From the IMG/VR virus record IMGVR_UViG_3300023175_000005, positions 62,001 through 126,000 of that record: a DNA stretch of 64,000 bases. One strand, written 5' to 3'. The first letter of the stretch is position 1. Each line of letters opens with the position of its first letter. Under the pieces are notes generated by a model. It was given only the letters and a program-made list of their open reading frames with translations, was not told the origin of the DNA and ran no database searches. The position numbers were made by a program, and so were the translations under genes. Shown here one piece after another: positions 33,101 to 39,708 of the stretch.

Positions 33101-33265
33101 TTGTGCTTTATTATAATTTTCTTGTATACGTGTTGCTGTATCAGGGCCGCCACCGCCACCACGTCTTTCAGTTGCTGCTAATAAAGCCTGTAAGGTGGCT
33201 TCACTTGCTACGCCGTCTCTTGGACGGGGGCCGCCTACATTACTAATTTCTACATCTTCTGCCAA
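30146..33265 (-). CDS. Tape measure protein (1039 aa, TTG start)
   Basis: Long helical Ala/Gly/Thr-rich protein with periodic aromatic residues; C-terminal FATGT...LHGNEAVVP motif; divergent from gp26. Confidence 0.75.
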   Translation of the reverse strand: MAEDVEISNVGGPRPRDGVASEATLQALLAATERRGGGGGPDTATRIQENYNKAQKDGTDKVSKLGKAAEAAGKGLKGFAKELAFGGTRASDFAEAIFGSTNVVTRLTRYLDHTVDQFRSLASVGASFENSIFEMMKISAEASMSLDDFAQMVRDNAANLAFFGGTVTNGAKLLGTFSQEFRTGLGRQFFAMGFTIEDVNEGLIDFLSNERMRQSQALRFDGQTQASAANYILQLDRLAKLTGEERRQLADRMAQQMTEARIRNQLNRLNENERNNLRGALTFFDTRLPGFSDGFQDLMDGVAQTDLGKALVQAMPGIETYMQRVFTGEEELSDVISTLQNRFGPTLERFSQQYGPAQLTSMQNSSNGVVAALASVADYAYQFNSIRGIDAGLSEEEQGRRNRLTSALGNFEQAITDVRKSVVRAFFEIVDGTDGRGGLLEVFGEFGDALKNFFSPGAAGGLSTVTNTVKDFLNAIFGPQGFVTRGLRRFNDFLNSGEARDALGYLQEKLVEFANYLESIFTDQDGKLTIIEGLKTLLRDTFANIMDFAFGELQQGPNGEQSRSGGMFDSIKQSIAGFFSGTEFGKAITDSITNAFNTVDTHLSKILGMPQGTTVSDWLTTQLTAIQNAFNGPDGVLSKVTTLYDDIKVFVTTQVTAIENAFNGPDGILSKITTLYNDIKGFIGTSGQTSLTQWFDNTLATISNMIDTVTTTMNSTVNYFRDALGFGQGQTLREWFDSTWTSISNTMNAINNTIITVMDTIADTFGFAPGGQTFQEWMNTTLTDLQTKMQTFINTQINAVRDLLGMEATEDFASYIDRLIQEMTISIEAGMMQILKSLGQYAKSFIPGAKMTDTQRDDAMTRFMSGEQLDKNELQSLIQTIRAEQVQRSIDNGSVISGNFAKFLNLVTDPVSDALNLDALMTDPDALRQSIMALYPNSPSFPEFATGTNGFRDFGRGTHAILHGNEAVVPRNTEAGQLLDAFYERQGSSTDQTQLIQKIDQLNNNMKMAVHLLSEGLSVEKGIARNTKGSTNLYRSLGR

Positions 33266-33284
33266 TGAATCATTCCAAATTAAC

Positions 33285-33347
33285 TGCGCACATTATATTA
33301 ATTCATATATATACGTGTAGTATTTATCCGGAGAAAAAATACATGCA
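33285..33347. promoter_or_regulatory. Overlapping late promoters on opposite strands for gp26 (+) and the tape measure gene (-)
   Basis: Plus: TGCGCAC-ATT...TATATA (33285/33306). Minus: TGCATGT-ATT...TAAATA (33347/33326). Confidence 0.55.
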
Positions 33348-34200
33348 GACAGCAACAGCAAACCCGCTGTCTAAACATTTTAGACAGCCTAAATTATATA
33401 TCAAATTACCTAGTGGTGGAAATTTTTATCGTCCTGGTAGTCTTGTGCCTGAGCAAACGGGTGAATACCCTGTGTATGCTATGACAGCAAAGGATGAACT
33501 TATGTTCAAAACTCCTGATGCTTTGTTAAACGGCCAAAGCACAGTAAACGTAATTCAAAGTTGTATGCCCAATATCAAAGATGGTTGGTCAATACCTAGC
33601 ATCGACATTGATGCTATATTAATTGCAATTAGAATCGCAACCTATGGCGAAGTAATGGAACTAGGTGTTAACATCAAAGAAATAGATGAAGAAAGATCAT
33701 TTGAACTTGATTTGCGCACAGTTCTTGATGGACTAATTGCAAGACAGTATGATAATGTTTTTCAAATCGGCGACTTTACTTTTGAAATTGCGCCGATGGT
33801 GTACAAAAAGTTTACAGAAATTGCTTTAAAAACATTTGAAGAACAACGTTTGTTTAGAATTGTTAACGACGATAACATGAGCGAAACAGATAAAATTACT
33901 CAGTTTAATGAAGCATTTGTTAGAGTTACCGAACTTAACATTAGTAATATTCTAAACAGTATTATGTCAATACAGTTTCAGGATGAAGAACCTGTTACTA
34001 ACAGAGATCATATTATAGAATTTTTTGAAAACGCCGACAAAGACATTTACACTTCTCTTATAGTTCATTTAGATGAACAAAGAGAAAAGTTTGCAATACC
34101 GCCATTCAAGGCACGTCTAAGTCCAGCGGATATCGAAAGAGGAGCACCAGAAACTATTGATGTTCCGATTACTTTCGATCAATCAAATTTTTTCGCCTAA
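33343..34200 (+). CDS. gp26: Baseplate hub assembly chaperone, gp26-like (true start probably ATG 33343)
   Basis: IKLPSGG...VYAMTAKDEL...DIDAILIAIRIATYGE motifs; GGAG RBS before 33343; ends NFFA. Confidence 0.8.
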   Translation: MQTATANPLSKHFRQPKLYIKLPSGGNFYRPGSLVPEQTGEYPVYAMTAKDELMFKTPDALLNGQSTVNVIQSCMPNIKDGWSIPSIDIDAILIAIRIATYGEVMELGVNIKEIDEERSFELDLRTVLDGLIARQYDNVFQIGDFTFEIAPMVYKKFTEIALKTFEEQRLFRIVNDDNMSETDKITQFNEAFVRVTELNISNILNSIMSIQFQDEEPVTNRDHIIEFFENADKDIYTSLIVHLDEQREKFAIPPFKARLSPADIERGAPETIDVPITFDQSNFFA

Positions 34201-34943: not shown

Positions 34944-35065
34944 AAGACAATCCTTTTTGATGTTGTTATATTTATTTATATGAATTATTTAGTATTGCTA
35001 CTACGTAGCAATAAGTTTTCGCTATCGCTCAAACTATATTTGTTTTTTTATTAGTGCGAAGCACT

Positions 35066-35362
35066 TAGTTTCATGTAGATTAATTAGTCAGACGGAACCT
35101 TGCAGCGGTTCCATCCTCCTCGAGCTTCATGTGAGTTGCATAGCCGAGACTTGGAAGTAGGTATTTGACTTTGCTACTGGGCTCTAACCTTTCCCAACCT
35201 ACGTCGACATCACGCAAAATGCGCTATCCCCCGCTTCGTTCCTAGTGCTAAGGGGTTTTCGTAGCATACAGCCTGTGGGACTTCACCAGTGTCTGATCAC
35301 GTGGTTACGTGAAGCTCAAGGTGGATCGAACAATTCCGATCAAACAGTGTCCTGATGTGCCT
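35066..35362 (-). ncRNA. Putative ~290-nt structured RNA immediately 3' of the GIY-YIG gene
   Basis: GC-rich island; long-range helix UCCACCUUGAGCUUCA/UGAAGCUCGAGGAGGA; several hairpins; H-type pseudoknot; G-U pairs favour the minus strand. Confidence 0.6.
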
Positions 35363-35774
35363 TTAAATTTTCTCTAAGTATTTTTGAACCACCAACTCGA
35401 ACGTTTATAATACCATTATAGTATTCATCTGTTTCTAAAACTCTACGTTCAAATTGTTCTCGTGCCTCTAAATATGACATTTCGCCTCTAGATTTACAAA
35501 AATAAAGTATTTCTCTTGTAAACTTGTTTTCGCCTAATTTTTCTACGTCTGCTATTAGTTTATCTGACGATCCCCAATAGTCTCGCCAATCTGATTCCTT
35601 GTAGCCTCGTCTTTTATTTTTTTTGCCTTTAAGCGGTGGTTTGGTTGTTTTAAACTTTGCTAGTTTTTTGCCTACGTATTTGCGATTGTCCGTTAAATTA
35701 GTAATAAGGTAAACAAACCCTTCGTACTCGTTTGGTATTTCTGTTACTTCTTTACCTTGATATATCCAATTCAT
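35340..35774 (-). CDS. Stand-alone GIY-YIG endonuclease (144 aa)
   Basis: GFVYLITN...KYVGKK, YWGSS, catalytic Glu in SYLEAREQ, and YYN motifs. Confidence 0.85.
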   Translation of the reverse strand: MNWIYQGKEVTEIPNEYEGFVYLITNLTDNRKYVGKKLAKFKTTKPPLKGKKNKRRGYKESDWRDYWGSSDKLIADVEKLGENKFTREILYFCKSRGEMSYLEAREQFERRVLETDEYYNGIINVRVGGSKILRENLKAHQDTV

Positions 35775-35792: not shown

Positions 35793-36020
35793 CTATGTGC
35801 TTTCTTCTCTTGTTTTGGATAGAGGATGTTTTTTTAGTGCCTGTTGGTGTATTTCTTGTATTTCTAAACGTCTTACCTTTGCTAGTTTCATAATTTGACT
35901 TAAATGTTTGCGAACTACTCGTCTTTTTGCCTCAGATGGCCTTTGTAAAAATATTTCATTGGCTTTAAAGTAAGCCAAATACTCTTTTACCAATTGATCA
36001 TGTACATCGTCTTCAATCAT
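35793..36020 (-). CDS. Small basic helical protein, possibly Hc1/histone-H1-like family
   Basis: HDQLVKEYLAYFKANEIF...RRVVRKHLSQIMKLAKVRRLEI pattern. Confidence 0.4.
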   Translation of the reverse strand: MIEDDVHDQLVKEYLAYFKANEIFLQRPSEAKRRVVRKHLSQIMKLAKVRRLEIQEIHQQALKKHPLSKTREEST

Positions 36021-37792
36021 TCTACCACTTCAATGTCGTTTTCGTATGAAGTAAAGCCATTTTCCTTTACAACCTTTAGAATATTGTTTACTCTGCCTAC
36101 TAGTTCGTCTTTATGACTAATCAAATAGATGTTTTTCTGTCTTTCTCTGCCCATCTTCTTTAGTACACTCAAAGAATTCTCGACACCCTGACTGTCCATA
36201 CCACTATCAATAAGTTCGTCAATGAATAATAGGTTCAGTCCTTGGTACAATGACTCCCAAACATCACGGAATGCAAAACTCATACCAAGTATTAGCCTAT
36301 TGCGTTCACCTCTTGACAAGTTATCAAAGTCTAAGTCTTGGCCAAGTTGTGTTATTTCAACGGCTAAGTCGTTTTGGAATGTAACTTGATGAGGTAAGCC
36401 TAACTTATCGAGATAATTCGTAAGCCTGTTGTTTAGATATGCAAGATTTTGATCAATAATCTTCTTTCTTATGAAAGAATCTTTGTTTGTTAGTAGTTTT
36501 AACAAAAACTCTTGGTGTTCTTTGAAAGTATTCAGTTGATTTATAACTGACCAATCGATATCTTGCAGTGCTGTGTTAGTTAAATCGTCAATTTGTGCCT
36601 GATAAGGGTCTTCTTCTTGCTCTTTACTTAGCAATGTATTCTTTAAGTTATCTACGTTGTTTCTATGTTCATATGCTTCACGCATTGTATCATAAAATGT
36701 AGTAGGACGACCGTCAATATCACCAATTATACCCAATTCAACAGCGTTATCATCAAATTTATTTTTTATTTCAATGAAATATGCTCTGGCATCGGCTAGA
36801 TCTTTAGTTTTAGTTGCAAGAATCTCTGCTTTCTTAGTTTCATGTAGTTCTTGACCACATGTATAACAAATAGCATCGTCTAATTCTGCAATGTCTTTAG
36901 TAACCTTTTTTACAGACTTGTCTGCACGTTGTAGTGCAGGCTCTAACGTGCTTAATTCTTTTCTAAGAGCCGTTATTTTGTTGTTTAGTTCTTGCCAATT
37001 CTGTAATTGTTCGTGATTTTCAAGTTCTTTTTCAATATCTACTTGTTCTAGTTCTTTAATACCGTTTTTTAACTTTTCAATGTCTGTTTTTTGCTTTGTT
37101 TTCCATGCAGACTGTCTAGTTCTTAGTGTATTAATACTTTGAGAGATTTTTTCATTAGAAGATTGTATTGCATTAATCTTTAATTGTTCTTCTGTAATGC
37201 TATCTTTGGTATATTTGATTTGTTCTTTAAGATTATCTGCCTTTTCTGATAAAATAGTAATACCTAGCAGTTGCTCAATGACTTCACGTTGATCATTTTG
37301 TCGCATACTTAGGAAAGGCTCGGTGTATGTGTTCAATGCAACCACGTGCTTGAACATATTGTGACTCATTTCAAGTAAACCATTAATAGAGTCTTGTGTT
37401 TTACGGCTATCGCCTTGCGATTCGTCAGTTAAATCTTGTTGTTCGTGGTCGTTTACATAAAATTTTAGTACATTAGGCGATCTTCCACGTTCAATTCGAT
37501 AACTGTTTCCACCTTTTTCAAAGTTTAGTGTAACCAACATGCCCTTACTATTGGTTTTGTTAATCAAGTTATTACGCTTGATGTTTGTTAGTGCTTGGCC
37601 GTACAAGGCATAGGACAATGCATTGATTATCGTAGTTTTACCTGTACCGTTGCGTGATCCTGAATCATCACCTCCTTGGTCTAAGTTTTCACCAAGCACT
37701 AGAGTTAACTGTTCACGGTCAAAGTCAACAGCTTGGGTAACATTACCCACACTCATAAAGTTTTTTACGGTTAAATCTTTAAATTTTATCAT
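36017..37792 (-). CDS. gp46: Rad50/SbcC-like recombination ATPase
   Basis: KNFMSVG, Walker A NGTGKTT, CxxC hook (CYTC), signature LSRGE, Walker B LFIDE, ISH. Confidence 0.95.
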   Translation of the reverse strand: MIKFKDLTVKNFMSVGNVTQAVDFDREQLTLVLGENLDQGGDDSGSRNGTGKTTIINALSYALYGQALTNIKRNNLINKTNSKGMLVTLNFEKGGNSYRIERGRSPNVLKFYVNDHEQQDLTDESQGDSRKTQDSINGLLEMSHNMFKHVVALNTYTEPFLSMRQNDQREVIEQLLGITILSEKADNLKEQIKYTKDSITEEQLKINAIQSSNEKISQSINTLRTRQSAWKTKQKTDIEKLKNGIKELEQVDIEKELENHEQLQNWQELNNKITALRKELSTLEPALQRADKSVKKVTKDIAELDDAICYTCGQELHETKKAEILATKTKDLADARAYFIEIKNKFDDNAVELGIIGDIDGRPTTFYDTMREAYEHRNNVDNLKNTLLSKEQEEDPYQAQIDDLTNTALQDIDWSVINQLNTFKEHQEFLLKLLTNKDSFIRKKIIDQNLAYLNNRLTNYLDKLGLPHQVTFQNDLAVEITQLGQDLDFDNLSRGERNRLILGMSFAFRDVWESLYQGLNLLFIDELIDSGMDSQGVENSLSVLKKMGRERQKNIYLISHKDELVGRVNNILKVVKENGFTSYENDIEVVE

Positions 37793-38802
37793 TATAACTC
37801 TTTGTAAATGTCCAACAGCATCTTTTTATTGAAAGATTCAGAGTCAATTGCAAGAATTTCGTTGCTAACAATTTGATCCACACTCTCAAACTGTGCAATA
37901 TCAAGTTCTGTTGTAATTTCTTCAATTTGTTTTTGTGGTATTAGTGTAATTTCTCTACATTTGTACTGATCTATAAATGTTTCTTTAATAAAACTTGCTT
38001 CTTCGTATGAAATAGGAAGGTCAAGTGTTACCCTCAAGTACATATTAGGTTTGATCAGTGTGTCTTTTTCGTCAATCAACTGAGATAACTTAACTGTACG
38101 AAACTTTGGACAGTCTAGCCAGTTGATATACTCTGGTTCTGCATCGTTCTCACGGTCCAGTATCATCATACCACGGTCATCATCCCAAGTATCTGCATAG
38201 TTGTGTGGGAAAGCATTACCTATGTAGTGGATCTTGCCCTGCCGTTGACGTTTGTGGAAGTGTCCGCTGAACACATACTCTTGATTCTTGAAGTGTTGTG
38301 ACTTTAGTTCACCGTGATCTGGCATCTGCACCATAGCATTCATATAGAAACTAGGTAATTCAAAGTGTCCAAACAAATATTTGGCTTGTATCTTCTCTAT
38401 ACGGCGCCATTCATCGCCTACTAACCAAGGAACTAGTGCTACATCTTCTACAACTTGTATTTCGTTAACAACTGTTATACCTGGAATGTGTTTTGCCCAT
38501 TCGGTGCTTTTAACATCACGTTTATCTTTGTAATACAAATCGTGATTGCCTGCAAACATATAAAAGTTTTCAAATGCTGCACCTAGTTTTTCTAAACTAC
38601 GAATACCTGCATCCATAGTTGTTAAATTAAGACTATTTCTGTTATGATTCCAGTCACCGCAGAAAATACCAGTCTCGCAACCGTTTTCTTTTGCTGTTTC
38701 GATGTACCAGTCTATGAAGTTTTCACAATCTTGGTTATGTACTCGTGAATTACCCTTCATACCAAAGTGTATGTCAGTAAACACTGCTGCTTTTTTAAAC
38801 AA
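37792..38802 (-). CDS. gp47: Mre11/SbcD-like recombination nuclease
   Basis: Metallophosphoesterase motifs TDIHFG, GD, GNHD, GHFE and SGHFH. Confidence 0.95.
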   Translation of the reverse strand: MFKKAAVFTDIHFGMKGNSRVHNQDCENFIDWYIETAKENGCETGIFCGDWNHNRNSLNLTTMDAGIRSLEKLGAAFENFYMFAGNHDLYYKDKRDVKSTEWAKHIPGITVVNEIQVVEDVALVPWLVGDEWRRIEKIQAKYLFGHFELPSFYMNAMVQMPDHGELKSQHFKNQEYVFSGHFHKRQRQGKIHYIGNAFPHNYADTWDDDRGMMILDRENDAEPEYINWLDCPKFRTVKLSQLIDEKDTLIKPNMYLRVTLDLPISYEEASFIKETFIDQYKCREITLIPQKQIEEITTELDIAQFESVDQIVSNEILAIDSESFNKKMLLDIYKEL

Positions 38803-38857: not shown

Positions 38858-39685
38858 TTATTTTTTTGAGTCTTCTTCCCAACGTGCCTTAGAACGTTCG
38901 TGTTCGCCTTGGCTTTGTCTTGTGTAACTTGGGTTGAGATTGTTCATTTCTAGGATATCATCTCTAATATTTTGATTTCGTTTTTCTAAATTAATTACTC
39001 TTACAAATGAATTTGTAACTGCGGCTGTATAATAAGCAAATGGGTTTTGTGATTTTGATTCATCAAACTGCAAACCAATTTGTGATAATTGCAAAATAGC
39101 CTGACCTTTCATTTCGTCATTGTACGTGTAGCCACGCACATTTCCTCTAGTTGCATATCTTTCACACAATTTCATCCACATCATTGCTAATTTGTTTGTA
39201 GCCATACCGTGTGTTTTGTCAAAATGTCCATTTTCCATTCCACCTGTCCAATGGCTTTTGCCTACACAGACAAGTTCATCGTTTTCGTTAAACTTGTAGT
39301 GCTGAAATGGAGGAAAATTCAATTTTGTTTTAGTATCTGCAATAGTTTTAGGATTTTTCTTACGTCCTGGTTCTTCTGGAACATGATCAAACGTCATAAT
39401 ACGAAAAATTAGTTCATATTTGCTAATTTTACGGTAATCAACTTCGCATTCGGAGAGTTTTTTCTTGCGTCCAGCAGCTTTTTCTGCTTCATAAATTCTT
39501 TGTGTTTGTTTTTTTGCTTTGTTCTTTTTTGCCTCAGCAATTGTTCTAATGTTTACCTTTTCAATACTAGGTAAAATGATATCATAATCAGCATAACTAT
39601 TATCAGTATAACTGCAAAAAGTATTTTTTGATTTGTGTATCTCGGCTAGAATGTCCTTGTTGTTTAAATAATTGACTTTTTTCAT
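38858..39685 (-). CDS. gp55: Late-transcription sigma factor (start probably ATG 39685)
   Basis: NYLNNKD, YTYNDEM and FDESKSQNPFAYYT...EKR motifs; adjacent to gp47; GGAG RBS. Confidence 0.85.
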   Translation of the reverse strand: MKKVNYLNNKDILAEIHKSKNTFCSYTDNSYADYDIILPSIEKVNIRTIAEAKKNKAKKQTQRIYEAEKAAGRKKKLSECEVDYRKISKYELIFRIMTFDHVPEEPGRKKNPKTIADTKTKLNFPPFQHYKFNENDELVCVGKSHWTGGMENGHFDKTHGMATNKLAMMWMKLCERYATRGNVRGYTYNDEMKGQAILQLSQIGLQFDESKSQNPFAYYTAAVTNSFVRVINLEKRNQNIRDDILEMNNLNPSYTRQSQGEHERSKARWEEDSKK

Positions 39686-39708
39686 TTTTTCTCCAAGTTG
39701 ATACACAT

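What the first reader, a model, noticed from the sequence alone, without database searches (positions are those of the whole stretch)
35066..35774. Minimal GIY-YIG nuclease followed directly by a ~290-nt pseudoknotted RNA
Seen: the structured, GC-rich region starts at the ORF's last codons. Elements: GAUCG/CGAUC; a 16-bp long-range helix with one mismatch (UCCACCUUGAGCUUCA/UGAAGCUCGAGGAGGA); UCACGU/ACGUGA; a pseudoknot UGCUA-[CCCC]-UAGCA...GGGG; GUAGGU/ACCUAC enclosing UGGG/CCCA; GAUGGAACC/GGUUCCGUC. Duplicated words include AUCAG(G)ACACUG, AAGUC..GGCU..AUGC and ACAUGAA. The 144-aa nuclease has no separate DNA-binding domain. Known: TnpB reRNA and IscB omega/HEARO RNAs sit beside or overlap their nuclease genes. 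Inference: a nuclease-RNA partnership (guide, scaffold or antitoxin), or a ColE1 RNAII-like primer processed at an origin. Small GIY-YIG enzymes such as T4 EndoII work without RNA, so the linkage may be only positional.
Basis: partly seen in the sequence, partly recalled or inferred. Interest (0 to 1): 0.72.

Follow-up and report, generated by a model that had tools for sequence, protein, structure and literature searches.

The report
New phage RNA beside mobile nuclease
The GC-rich stretch after the small GIY-YIG nuclease gene is a real, about 300-nt pseudoknotted RNA gene of a large, mostly undescribed family in marine T4-like phages, but the nuclease looks like a mobile homing-type gene parked beside it, not its partner.

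Summary
**Verdict.** The ORF and the RNA are both real.
- The ORF (35340-35774, minus strand) is a 144-aa SegE-type GIY-YIG nuclease with its catalytic residues intact.
- The GC-rich 300 nt after it (about 35053-35352, minus strand) is non-coding. It recurs in more than 200 viral contigs.
- Strong compensatory covariation supports a multi-domain, pseudoknotted fold.

The showpiece 16-bp long-range helix is not conserved. Both of its strands belong to other, covarying helices.

**No sign that nuclease and RNA work together.**
- A 72%-identical nuclease sits beside ribonucleotide reductase genes in phage Melnitz. Neighbouring core proteins there are only 25-34% identical, and no such RNA was found in that genome.
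- The RNA also occurs in an unrelated terminase/HNH phage group with no GIY-YIG gene nearby.
- Extra ORFs sometimes separate nuclease and RNA.

**Best reading.** This is an autonomous structured RNA gene with a mobile seg-like endonuclease gene lodged at its 5' edge.

**Relation to known families.** The window's version matches no Rfam family. In sister phages the RNA at the same locus carries Rfam's uncharacterised Polynucleobacter-1 motif as its 5' domain.

**Unexplained.** Two short identical boxes flank the 3' hairpin. They differ between lineages yet match each other within nearly every genome, and no complementary sequence was found nearby. The RNA's function is unknown.

The parts
35340..35774 (-). 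Minimal GIY-YIG nuclease gene, 144 aa (SegE-type domain only; PHROG 447).
   Evidence: Pfam PF19835 E=1e-34; phrog_447 E=5e-38. GFVY, YxGKK, R56, E88 and N120 are invariant in 8 diverse homologues. Homology to relatives ends near residue 135. The last codons are the RNA leader.
35053..35352 (-). Structured non-coding RNA, about 300 nt, the 'group 1' form of the family.
   Evidence: Present downstream of the GIY-YIG gene in nearly all of 80 related loci and in 120 loci found through the RNA core alone. Proposed structure on A3: 88% of cells paired, 25 pairs changed on both sides, covariation score 0.218 against 0.126 in shuffles, 0 of 500 shuffles as high. G-U pairs fix the strand as minus.
35278..35352 (-). 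5' domain, a three-way junction. Closing helix GGAC (35349-35352) / GUCC (35278-35281). Hairpin 35324-35341. Helix CACC (35320-35323) / GGUG (35284-35287) around hairpin 35297-35312.
   Evidence: GGAC/GUCC 100% paired with GAAC/GUUC and GGAU/AUCC variants. CACC/GGUG 96% paired with CUCC/GGAG, CGUC/GAUG and CGCU/AGCG variants.
35153..35266 (-). Core domain closed by helix UGCUAC (35261-35266) / GUAGCA (35172-35177). It holds CCCC/GGGG (35252-35255 / 35229-35232) with the loop GGAACGAAGC (35233-35242), a variable hairpin (35212-35224) and the 33-nt core (35178-35210). Proposed pseudoknots: GUAGGU (35197-35202) / ACCUAC (35157-35162) and GGAA/UUCC (35153-35156).
   Evidence: In the sister form the closing helix has 6 of 6 pairs changed on both sides. 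The 33-mer is almost invariant while flanking gp46 drops to 53% identity. By eye, GUAGGU/ACCUAC becomes ACAGGU/ACCUGU in the L269 type.
35118..35149 (-). Hairpin UCUCGG (35144-35149) / UCGAGG (35118-35123) with box R1 in its loop.
Evidence: UCUCGG/UUUGAGA and UCUUGG/UUCAAGA variants are seen (85% paired, 2 pairs changed on both sides). Mean duplex energy -6.7 against -3.8 kcal/mol for shuffles over 118 sequences.
35125..35136 (-). Box R1, ACUCACAUGAAG (variable core ACAUGAA at 35126-35132).
   Evidence: Identical to the R2 core in 109 of 110 unique homologues, although the core varies.
35091..35115 (-). 3' hairpin GAUGGAACC / GGUUCCGUC, followed by CUGACU (35086-35091). CUGACU may pair with GGUUAG in the core loop.
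   Evidence: 90-98% of cells paired, with G-U changes. The proposed loop pairing is 100% compatible, through G-U/G-C and C-G/U-G changes only.
35069..35080 (-). Box R2, AUCUACAUGAAA (core ACAUGAA at 35070-35076).
   Evidence: It lies at the 3' edge of the conserved element, just before the variable hairpin.
35053..35065 (-). Terminal hairpin AGUGC-UUCG-GCACU. No U-tract follows it.
   Evidence: 5 of 5 pairs changed on both sides across homologues. Metatranscriptome contigs stop between about 35032 and 34953.
34973..35033 (-). Downstream regulatory cassette: motif UUUGAGCGAUAGCGAAAAC (35015-35033), hairpin (34993-35013) and a T4-type late promoter ATATAAATA (34973-34981) ahead of the 172-aa gene.
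   Evidence: The motif is unique in the window. It recurs with a covarying hairpin after the RNA in relatives. Contigs of the 172-aa gene end at 34953-34965.

Best explanation
**Claim.** The GC-rich stretch is an autonomous gene for a large, compactly folded, pseudoknotted non-coding RNA. It belongs to a broad family resident at one locus of an uncultivated clade of marine and estuarine T4-like phages. That locus lies after gp47, gp46 and a small ORF, and before a hyperplastic region and the baseplate genes.

**The nuclease.** The GIY-YIG gene is a free-standing, horizontally mobile, seg-like endonuclease gene. It has lodged exactly at the RNA's 5' edge, and its ORF runs into the RNA leader. 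This matches how T4 segB sits in the tRNA cluster. The linkage is therefore positional, and at most a homing relationship in which the conserved RNA gene is the landing or target site.

**Shown**
- The RNA structure.
- Its distribution.
- That RNA and nuclease occur apart.
- The mobility of the nuclease gene.

**Inferred**
- The RNA acts in trans as a ribozyme-like or protein-binding scaffold.
- Its two identical single-stranded boxes, R1 and R2, are recognition sites for one common partner. That partner could be a nucleic acid that pairs with them or a sequence-specific RNase.
For: **The RNA is real**
- On the 46-sequence sister-form alignment, 95.6% of cells pair. 32 of 79 pairs changed on both sides. 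Slid controls pair in only 31-40% of cells.
- The window's own form gives 88% paired, and no shuffle reaches it.
- The core is nearly invariant while gp46 falls to 53% identity.

**The nuclease is mobile and independent**
- The nuclease is 72% identical to Melnitz's. gp46, gp47 and gp55 are only 25%, 30% and 34% identical.
- In Melnitz it sits after the ribonucleotide reductase genes.
- nhmmer with three profiles finds no such RNA in the complete Melnitz genome.
- 17 contigs with the reductase context also lack the RNA.
- PHROG 447 proteins are widespread in cyanophages and Felix O1-like phages.

**The RNA is independent**
- It occurs in the L125, L299 and L300 terminase/HNH phages, where tblastn finds no GIY-YIG gene.
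- Extra ORFs separate nuclease and RNA in L008, L101, L112, L129 and L163.
- RNA alleles are mosaic relative to their flanks. L008 has a 98%-identical gp46 but a different 5' domain.

**Boxes and expression**
- R1 equals R2 in 109 of 110 sequences, across 11 or more core variants and in every subfamily.
- Metatranscriptome contigs cover the RNA at a depth similar to its neighbours.
Against: - In the T4-like clade, every RNA locus with upstream sequence carries the GIY-YIG gene directly upstream, about 100 loci. This fits a functional tie as well as shared ancestry.
- The nuclease lacks a DNA-binding domain, so the source of its specificity is unexplained.
- No separate promoter for the RNA was found. 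Contigs run across the ORF-RNA junction, so co-transcription is likely.
- No discrete transcript ends could be seen, because only assembled contigs were available.
- The function and the partner of the boxes are not identified.
- Absence of the RNA in Melnitz rests on nhmmer, which would miss very divergent subfamilies.
Confidence: 0.55

Rival explanations
1. The RNA is the functional partner of the GIY-YIG nuclease. It would act as a guide or scaffold that supplies the missing DNA recognition, by analogy with TnpB/IscB omega-RNAs. The variable R1/R2 boxes would be the programmable part.
For: - The nuclease is a bare catalytic domain.
- The RNA starts inside its last codons.
- Adjacency is strict in about 100 T4-like loci.
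- The boxes vary between lineages but are kept identical within a genome, as a specificity element would be.
Against: - Orthologues 72-95% identical to the nuclease lack the RNA.
- The RNA occurs without any GIY-YIG gene.
- ORFs are inserted between the two.
- No variable guide-like end lies next to a transposon boundary.
- To my knowledge, no RNA-guided GIY-YIG enzyme has been described.
Confidence: 0.12
2. The RNA is a cis-acting 3' UTR element of the nuclease mRNA. It would block exonucleases, terminate transcription or act as an autoregulatory operator that limits a toxic nuclease. Alternatively it is a leader for downstream genes.
For: - The RNA is probably co-transcribed with the ORF. 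Contigs span 35247-35676, and no separate promoter was found.
- The leader helix overlaps the stop codon, so terminating ribosomes would unfold it (sequence).
- Rfam's curators listed the related Polynucleobacter-1 motif as possibly cis-regulatory.
Against: - 300-450 nt with three domains, pseudoknots and an invariant 33-mer is far more than a stabiliser needs.
- The same RNA follows unrelated ORFs and sits in other phages.
- Downstream genes vary and have their own late promoter.
Confidence: 0.12
3. The RNA gene is the homing target of the endonuclease. The roughly 55-65-nt hairpin segment between R1 and R2 would be an immunity insertion that splits the target site, like the T4 mobA / gene 60 cassette.
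For: - The nuclease gene is mobile and abuts a highly conserved sequence.
- The segment is an imperfect palindrome flanked by direct repeats.
Against: - The segment, with its flanking repeats, is present in every homologue, including phages without the GIY-YIG gene.
- An old insertion would not keep its flanking repeats identical while they diverge between lineages.
Confidence: 0.08
4. The RNA is an origin transcript or primer, ColE1 RNA II-like or T4 oriF/oriG-like.
For: Only position: it lies next to the recombination and replication genes gp46 and gp47.
Against: No repeated origin elements or AT-rich unwinding element were identified. The RNA is also present in an unrelated phage next to its terminase genes. 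No test of this idea was possible.
Confidence: 0.04

Closest known systems
Polynucleobacter-1 RNA motif (Rfam RF01718; Weinberg et al. 2010, PMC2864571)
   Same: In sister phages with the same gp46 then GIY-YIG locus (L254, L256, L273, L278), the RNA's 5' domain matches this family at 63-108 bits, against a threshold of 37. The habitat listed for it, fresh water and estuary, also fits. By eye, the first hairpin of the group 2 5' domain resembles the motif's.
   Different: Rfam's model covers only a 141-nt 5' domain, and its function is unknown. The window's RNA and the group 2 form give no hit at E<=10. The core, the R1-hairpin-R2 module and the phage locus are not part of the described motif.
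Free-standing homing endonuclease genes of T4-like phages (segB in the tRNA cluster, SegE, mobE by the nrd genes, F-CphI by psbA); from my own knowledge
   Same: A GIY-YIG gene is inserted between conserved genes, next to a highly conserved RNA gene. Identity is incongruent with the core genes (72% against 25-34%). Alternative insertion sites exist, after gp46 or after the reductase genes.
   Different: It has only 144 aa and no C-terminal DNA-binding domain. The gene is fixed in the RNA-bearing T4-like clade instead of sporadic. Cleavage activity and target are untested.
TnpB reRNA and IscB omega-RNA (HEARO)
   Same: A structured RNA of a few hundred nt starts at or inside the end of a small nuclease ORF.
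   Different: The nuclease fold differs (GIY-YIG, not RuvC/HNH). There are no transposon ends and no guide next to a boundary. Nuclease and RNA occur independently.
Large phage-borne structured RNAs of unknown function (GOLLD, ROOL)
   Same: It is a large, multi-domain, pseudoknotted RNA carried by phages. Variable hairpins often end in GNRA loops. No function is assigned.
   Different: There is no sequence or model match. It is smaller. It has the R1/R2 box pair. Multimerisation was not tested.
Type III toxin-antitoxin RNA (ToxI) and phage pseudo-ToxI mimics; from my own knowledge
   Same: Direct repeats that would give identical cleavage sites on both sides of one structured unit.
   Different: There are only two 7-12-nt boxes, not tandem 34-45-nt repeats. 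No ToxN-type gene is adjacent. A large extra scaffold lies upstream.

Membership tests
GIY-YIG nuclease superfamily (SegE-type domain) | GIY and YIG motifs plus the conserved Arg, Glu and Asn | tested here: met
   PF19835 E=1e-34. GFVY, YxGKK, R56, E88 and N120 are invariant in 8 homologues.
Free-standing homing endonuclease (Seg-like) | C-terminal DNA-binding domain joined to the catalytic domain | tested here: not met
   The protein is 144 aa and the Pfam match covers residues 3-123. No other domain was found, and there is no PDB sequence match.
Free-standing homing endonuclease (Seg-like) | Mobility: distribution and identity incongruent with core genes; alternative insertion sites between conserved genes | tested here: met
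   72% identity to Melnitz against 25-34% for gp46, gp47 and gp55. It sits after gp46 here and after the reductase genes there.
Free-standing homing endonuclease (Seg-like) | Site-specific cleavage of the allele that lacks the gene, and preferential inheritance | not testable with these tools
   Needs enzyme assays and mixed infections.
Polynucleobacter-1 RNA (RF01718) | Score at or above Rfam's gathering threshold (37 bits) | tested here: not met
   No hit for the window or for L026, even at E<=10. The threshold is met only by sister loci L254, L256, L273 and L278.
TnpB/IscB-type nuclease with omega-RNA | Obligate co-occurrence of nuclease and RNA | tested here: not met
   Nuclease without RNA. 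RNA without nuclease.
TnpB/IscB-type nuclease with omega-RNA | Conserved scaffold with a variable guide at a transposon end | tested here: not met
   The locus is syntenic, not transposed. The variable parts are structured domains and a paired set of boxes, not one terminal guide.
Group I intron (with an intron-borne GIY-YIG gene) | Match to the Rfam intron model and flanking exons of one gene | tested here: not met
   No Rfam hit at E<=10. No reading frame continues across the element. No spliced joints were seen in RNA contigs.
tmRNA (including two-piece) | tRNA-like domain and a tag reading frame | tested here: not met
   ARAGORN finds none in the window. Melnitz's true tmRNA is unrelated by nhmmer.
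Reverse-transcriptase template RNA (retron, DRT2/DRT10-like) | An associated reverse transcriptase gene | tested here: not met
   No PF00078 match in the 256-kb record, which is about 72% complete. The R1-R2 spacing is 53-68 nt and falls in all three phases.

The most novel reading that the evidence does not exclude
The RNA is a catalytic or protein-bound machine. Its two identical, fast-evolving boxes would form a programmable recognition element. For example, they could pair with both half-sites of a target, or mark two cleavage sites that release the hairpin unit. The phage would use this, possibly together with the adjacent minimal GIY-YIG nuclease, in phage-phage or phage-host conflict.
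Probability: 0.1. Interest if true: 0.9.

Novelty: new variant of a known kind. Interest (0 to 1): 0.62.

Why it matters
- **An abundant unknown.** This adds a widespread RNA family to the short list of large structured phage RNAs with no known function.
- **Context for an orphan motif.** It shows that Rfam's uncharacterised Polynucleobacter-1 motif is one domain of a bigger, modular phage RNA.
- **A testable puzzle.** The paired R1/R2 boxes are kept identical within nearly every genome while they diverge between genomes, and no complementary partner lies nearby. That is an unusual signature, and mutating one box or both would test it.
- **A clean case of mobility.** It documents a minimal GIY-YIG gene moving between distant T4-like lineages and settling beside a conserved RNA gene.

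Tried and rejected
- **Known RNA families.** Rfam at gathering threshold on the whole window, and at E<=10 on the region and on a group 2 member, gave nothing. ARAGORN found no tRNA or tmRNA. By eye, I found no RNase P, SRP, 6S or glutamine-riboswitch signatures.
- **Protein coding.** Rejected. There are stops in all frames. The invariant 33-mer shows no synonymous variation. Indels are not multiples of three.
- **Group I intron or C-terminal exon for the nuclease.** No continuing frame and no joints.
- **BLASTN against phage records.** No match.
- **Reverse-transcriptase template idea.** No RT gene, and the spacing falls in all three phases.
- **A complement of the boxes in cis.** No exact 7-mer complement in or near the RNA tracks the box variants. 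RNAduplex found no consistent partner column.
- **Variants lacking the segment between the boxes.** None among 125 unique sequences.
- **TAWAGGCA as a promoter motif.** Not enriched in the window. The sigma-70 scan was uninformative.
- **Covariance model.** Not built. The MAFFT alignment was not register-consistent across subfamilies, so nhmmer profiles were used instead.

Full report
**Setting**

The window is bases 62001-126000 of a 256.6-kb IMG/VR viral record. The neighbourhood is T4-like.
- gp47 lies at 37792-38802, gp46 at 36017-37792 and a gp55-like sigma factor at 38858-39706, all on the minus strand.
- A baseplate protein lies at 33265-34200 on the plus strand.
- DNA and RNA runs from salt-marsh samples hold the sequence.

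**The observation**

- ORF 35340-35774(-) encodes 144 aa. It matches Pfam SegE_GIY-YIG at E=1e-34 and PHROG 447 at E=5e-38. In many phage records PHROG 447 proteins are mislabelled 'NAD synthetase'.
- The hallmark residues are invariant in eight diverse homologues: GFVY, YxGKK, R56, E88 and N120.
- Downstream, 35066-35340 is a GC island of 51-53% GC against about 30%. It has stops in every minus-strand frame.
- Single-sequence folding is only mildly better than shuffles: z = -1.6 on the minus strand and -0.15 on the plus strand.
- Rfam and ARAGORN find nothing.

**Comparative evidence**

- The nuclease has more than 597 relatives in viral contigs. The best 80 all share the order gp47, gp46, a roughly 75-aa ORF, the GIY-YIG gene, a GC-rich element, variable genes and then the baseplate gene.
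- BLASTN finds the element after the nuclease in nearly all of them.
Wherever upstream DNA was available the context was the same, with one exception, L125.
- Three hits in bacterial metagenome-assembled genomes have the same phage context, so they are probably mis-binned phage contigs.
- The element comes in a roughly 300-nt form, 'group 1', as in the window. It also comes in a 420-450-nt form, 'group 2', with a larger 5' domain.

**Structure**

On 46 group 2 sequences my structure pairs in 95.6% of cells.
- 32 of 79 pairs changed on both sides.
- The covariation score is 0.235 against 0.123 in shuffles, and 0 of 500 shuffles reach it.
- Slid controls pair in only 31-40% of cells.

On 28 group 1 sequences including the window, 88% of cells pair and 25 pairs changed on both sides. 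Frequent G-U pairs fix the RNA strand as that of the nuclease gene.

The window RNA has three parts.
- **5' three-way junction.** It is closed by GGAC/GUCC.
- **Core domain.** It is closed by UGCUAC/GUAGCA. It holds CCCC/GGGG with the conserved loop GGAACGAAGC, a variable hairpin (GNRA-tipped in many relatives) and the near-invariant 33-mer AUGUCGACGUAGGUUGGGAAAGGUYAGAGCCCA.
  - Likely pseudoknots are GUAGGU/ACCUAC, GGAA/UUCC and a loop pairing of GGUYAG with CUGACY.
  - Their partners are invariant within the family, so they are compatible but not proven.
  - By eye, GUAGGU/ACCUAC becomes ACAGGU/ACCUGU in a divergent subfamily.
- **3' module.** This comprises a hairpin UCUCGG/UCGAGG carrying box R1 in its loop, a 9-bp hairpin, box R2 and a covarying terminal hairpin.

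Both of its strands are used by the better-supported helices above.

**The box pair**

- R1 (ACUC + ACAUGAA) and R2 (AUCU + ACAUGAA) flank the 3' hairpin, 53-68 nt apart.
- The 7-nt core varies between phages: ACAUGAA, GUAUGAA, GCAUGAA, ACAUAAU, ACAUGAU, ACAUGAG, ACGUGAA, ACAGGAA and others.
- Even so, the two copies are identical in 109 of 110 unique sequences.
- The longest exact repeat averages 7.5 nt, against 4.7 nt in shuffles.
- By eye, the rule also holds in divergent subfamilies: GGUGAAG, AUGUCAAG, AGAUAAU, AGAUGAUG, UGGUAAAGUU.
- It also holds in the unrelated L125, L299 and L300 lineage: AUCAUCAAGU and ACAUCAAGU.
- No complementary partner exists in or near the RNA. No reverse transcriptase gene is present. 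No homologue lacks the intervening segment. RNA contigs show no joints.
- This feature is unexplained. A shared partner acting in trans, either a pairing nucleic acid or a sequence-specific RNase, is my inference.

**Is the nuclease tied to the RNA?**

Four observations argue that it is not.
1. The closest isolate nuclease is in Methylophilales phage Melnitz.
   - It is 72% identical. gp46, gp47 and gp55 are only 25%, 30% and 34% identical, so the gene has moved horizontally.
   - In Melnitz it follows the ribonucleotide reductase genes, with only a short AT-rich spacer after it.
   - Three nhmmer profiles find no such RNA in the complete Melnitz genome. Its tmRNA and glutamine riboswitch are unrelated.
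   - Seventeen further contigs with the reductase context also lack the RNA.
2. L125, L299 and L300 are phages with TerS, TerL and HNH genes. They carry the RNA with no GIY-YIG gene in the held DNA.
3. Extra ORFs lie between nuclease and RNA in five loci. In each, the RNA leader follows the inserted ORF.
4. Homology between nuclease orthologues stops near residue 135. The tail is simply the RNA leader read through to a stop. This is as expected if the gene inserted next to an RNA gene that was already there.

RNA alleles are also mosaic. L008 shares 98%-identical gp46 and gp47 and the window's 3' module, but it has a group 2 5' domain and an inserted ORF.

Against independence:
- Within the T4-like clade the adjacency has no exceptions.
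- The protein has no DNA-binding domain.

**Relation to known RNAs**

- Many other gp46 then GIY-YIG loci carry more divergent GC-rich elements at the same place.
- In L254, L256, L273 and L278 the 5' domain of that element is Rfam RF01718, Polynucleobacter-1, at 63-108 bits.
- That motif was proposed in 2010 from Burkholderiales and freshwater or estuarine metagenomes, with no function assigned. The library holds no later paper on it.
- These loci keep the same 3' module, including matched boxes.
- The window RNA is therefore an undescribed relative within a modular superfamily. Only one domain of one branch of that superfamily is catalogued.

**Expression**

- Four metatranscriptome assemblies cover the RNA at about 10x, similar to the neighbouring genes.
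- Contigs run across the ORF-RNA junction.
- Breaks fall between about 35032 and 34953. That is between the RNA's terminal hairpin and the transcript of the 172-aa gene, which has a T4-type late promoter, ATATAAATA, at 34973-34981.
- Contigs give no strand and no true transcript ends.

**Verdict**

- This is a real structured RNA of unknown function, and the window's form is not described.
- The evidence points away from a nuclease-RNA partnership and towards a mobile seg-like gene parked at a conserved RNA gene.

Noticed in passing
window 34993-35033 (-): The motif UUUGAGCGAUAGCGAAAAC plus a covarying hairpin follows the RNA here and in many relatives (L210, L211, L126, L139, L150, L256). It is unique within the window. 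Its role is unknown.
   Followed up: partly
window 35616-35624: One metatranscriptome assembly (X16, depth 9 of 9) has an extra T in the T8 run, which is an A8 run in the mRNA inside the Lys-rich linker of the GIY-YIG ORF. That would shift the frame. It could be a strain variant, an error or transcriptional slippage.
   Followed up: no
L008 / L087 / L178 (236-kb contig) compared with the window: The flanking gp46 and gp47 are 98% identical. The RNA, however, has a group 2 5' domain joined to the window's 3' module, plus an inserted ORF. Recombination breakpoints therefore lie inside the RNA gene.
   Followed up: partly
L101, L129 (small Cys-rich ORF); L008, L112, L163 (another ORF): Small ORFs are inserted between the GIY-YIG gene and the RNA. 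In each case the RNA leader sequence follows the inserted ORF.
   Followed up: no
L009, L018, L027, L036 and many others: Many contigs end within a few hundred bases after the GIY-YIG gene. RNA contigs also break at 35247-35276. This suggests an assembly breakpoint caused by microdiversity in the RNA's variable domains.
   Followed up: no
L210, L211, L212: Contigs of 73-335 kb, binned as Crocinitomicaceae and Neomarinimicrobiota genomes, carry this T4-like phage locus. They are probably phage contigs mis-binned into bacterial genomes.
   Followed up: no
phage records: Homologues of this GIY-YIG protein (PHROG 447) are annotated 'NAD synthetase' in many cyanophage and Felix O1-like records. That looks like a propagated misannotation.
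   Followed up: no
window 35793-36020 (-): A 75-aa ORF overlaps the gp46 stop and is conserved in synteny at 36-100% identity. It has no Pfam or PHROG match.
   Followed up: no
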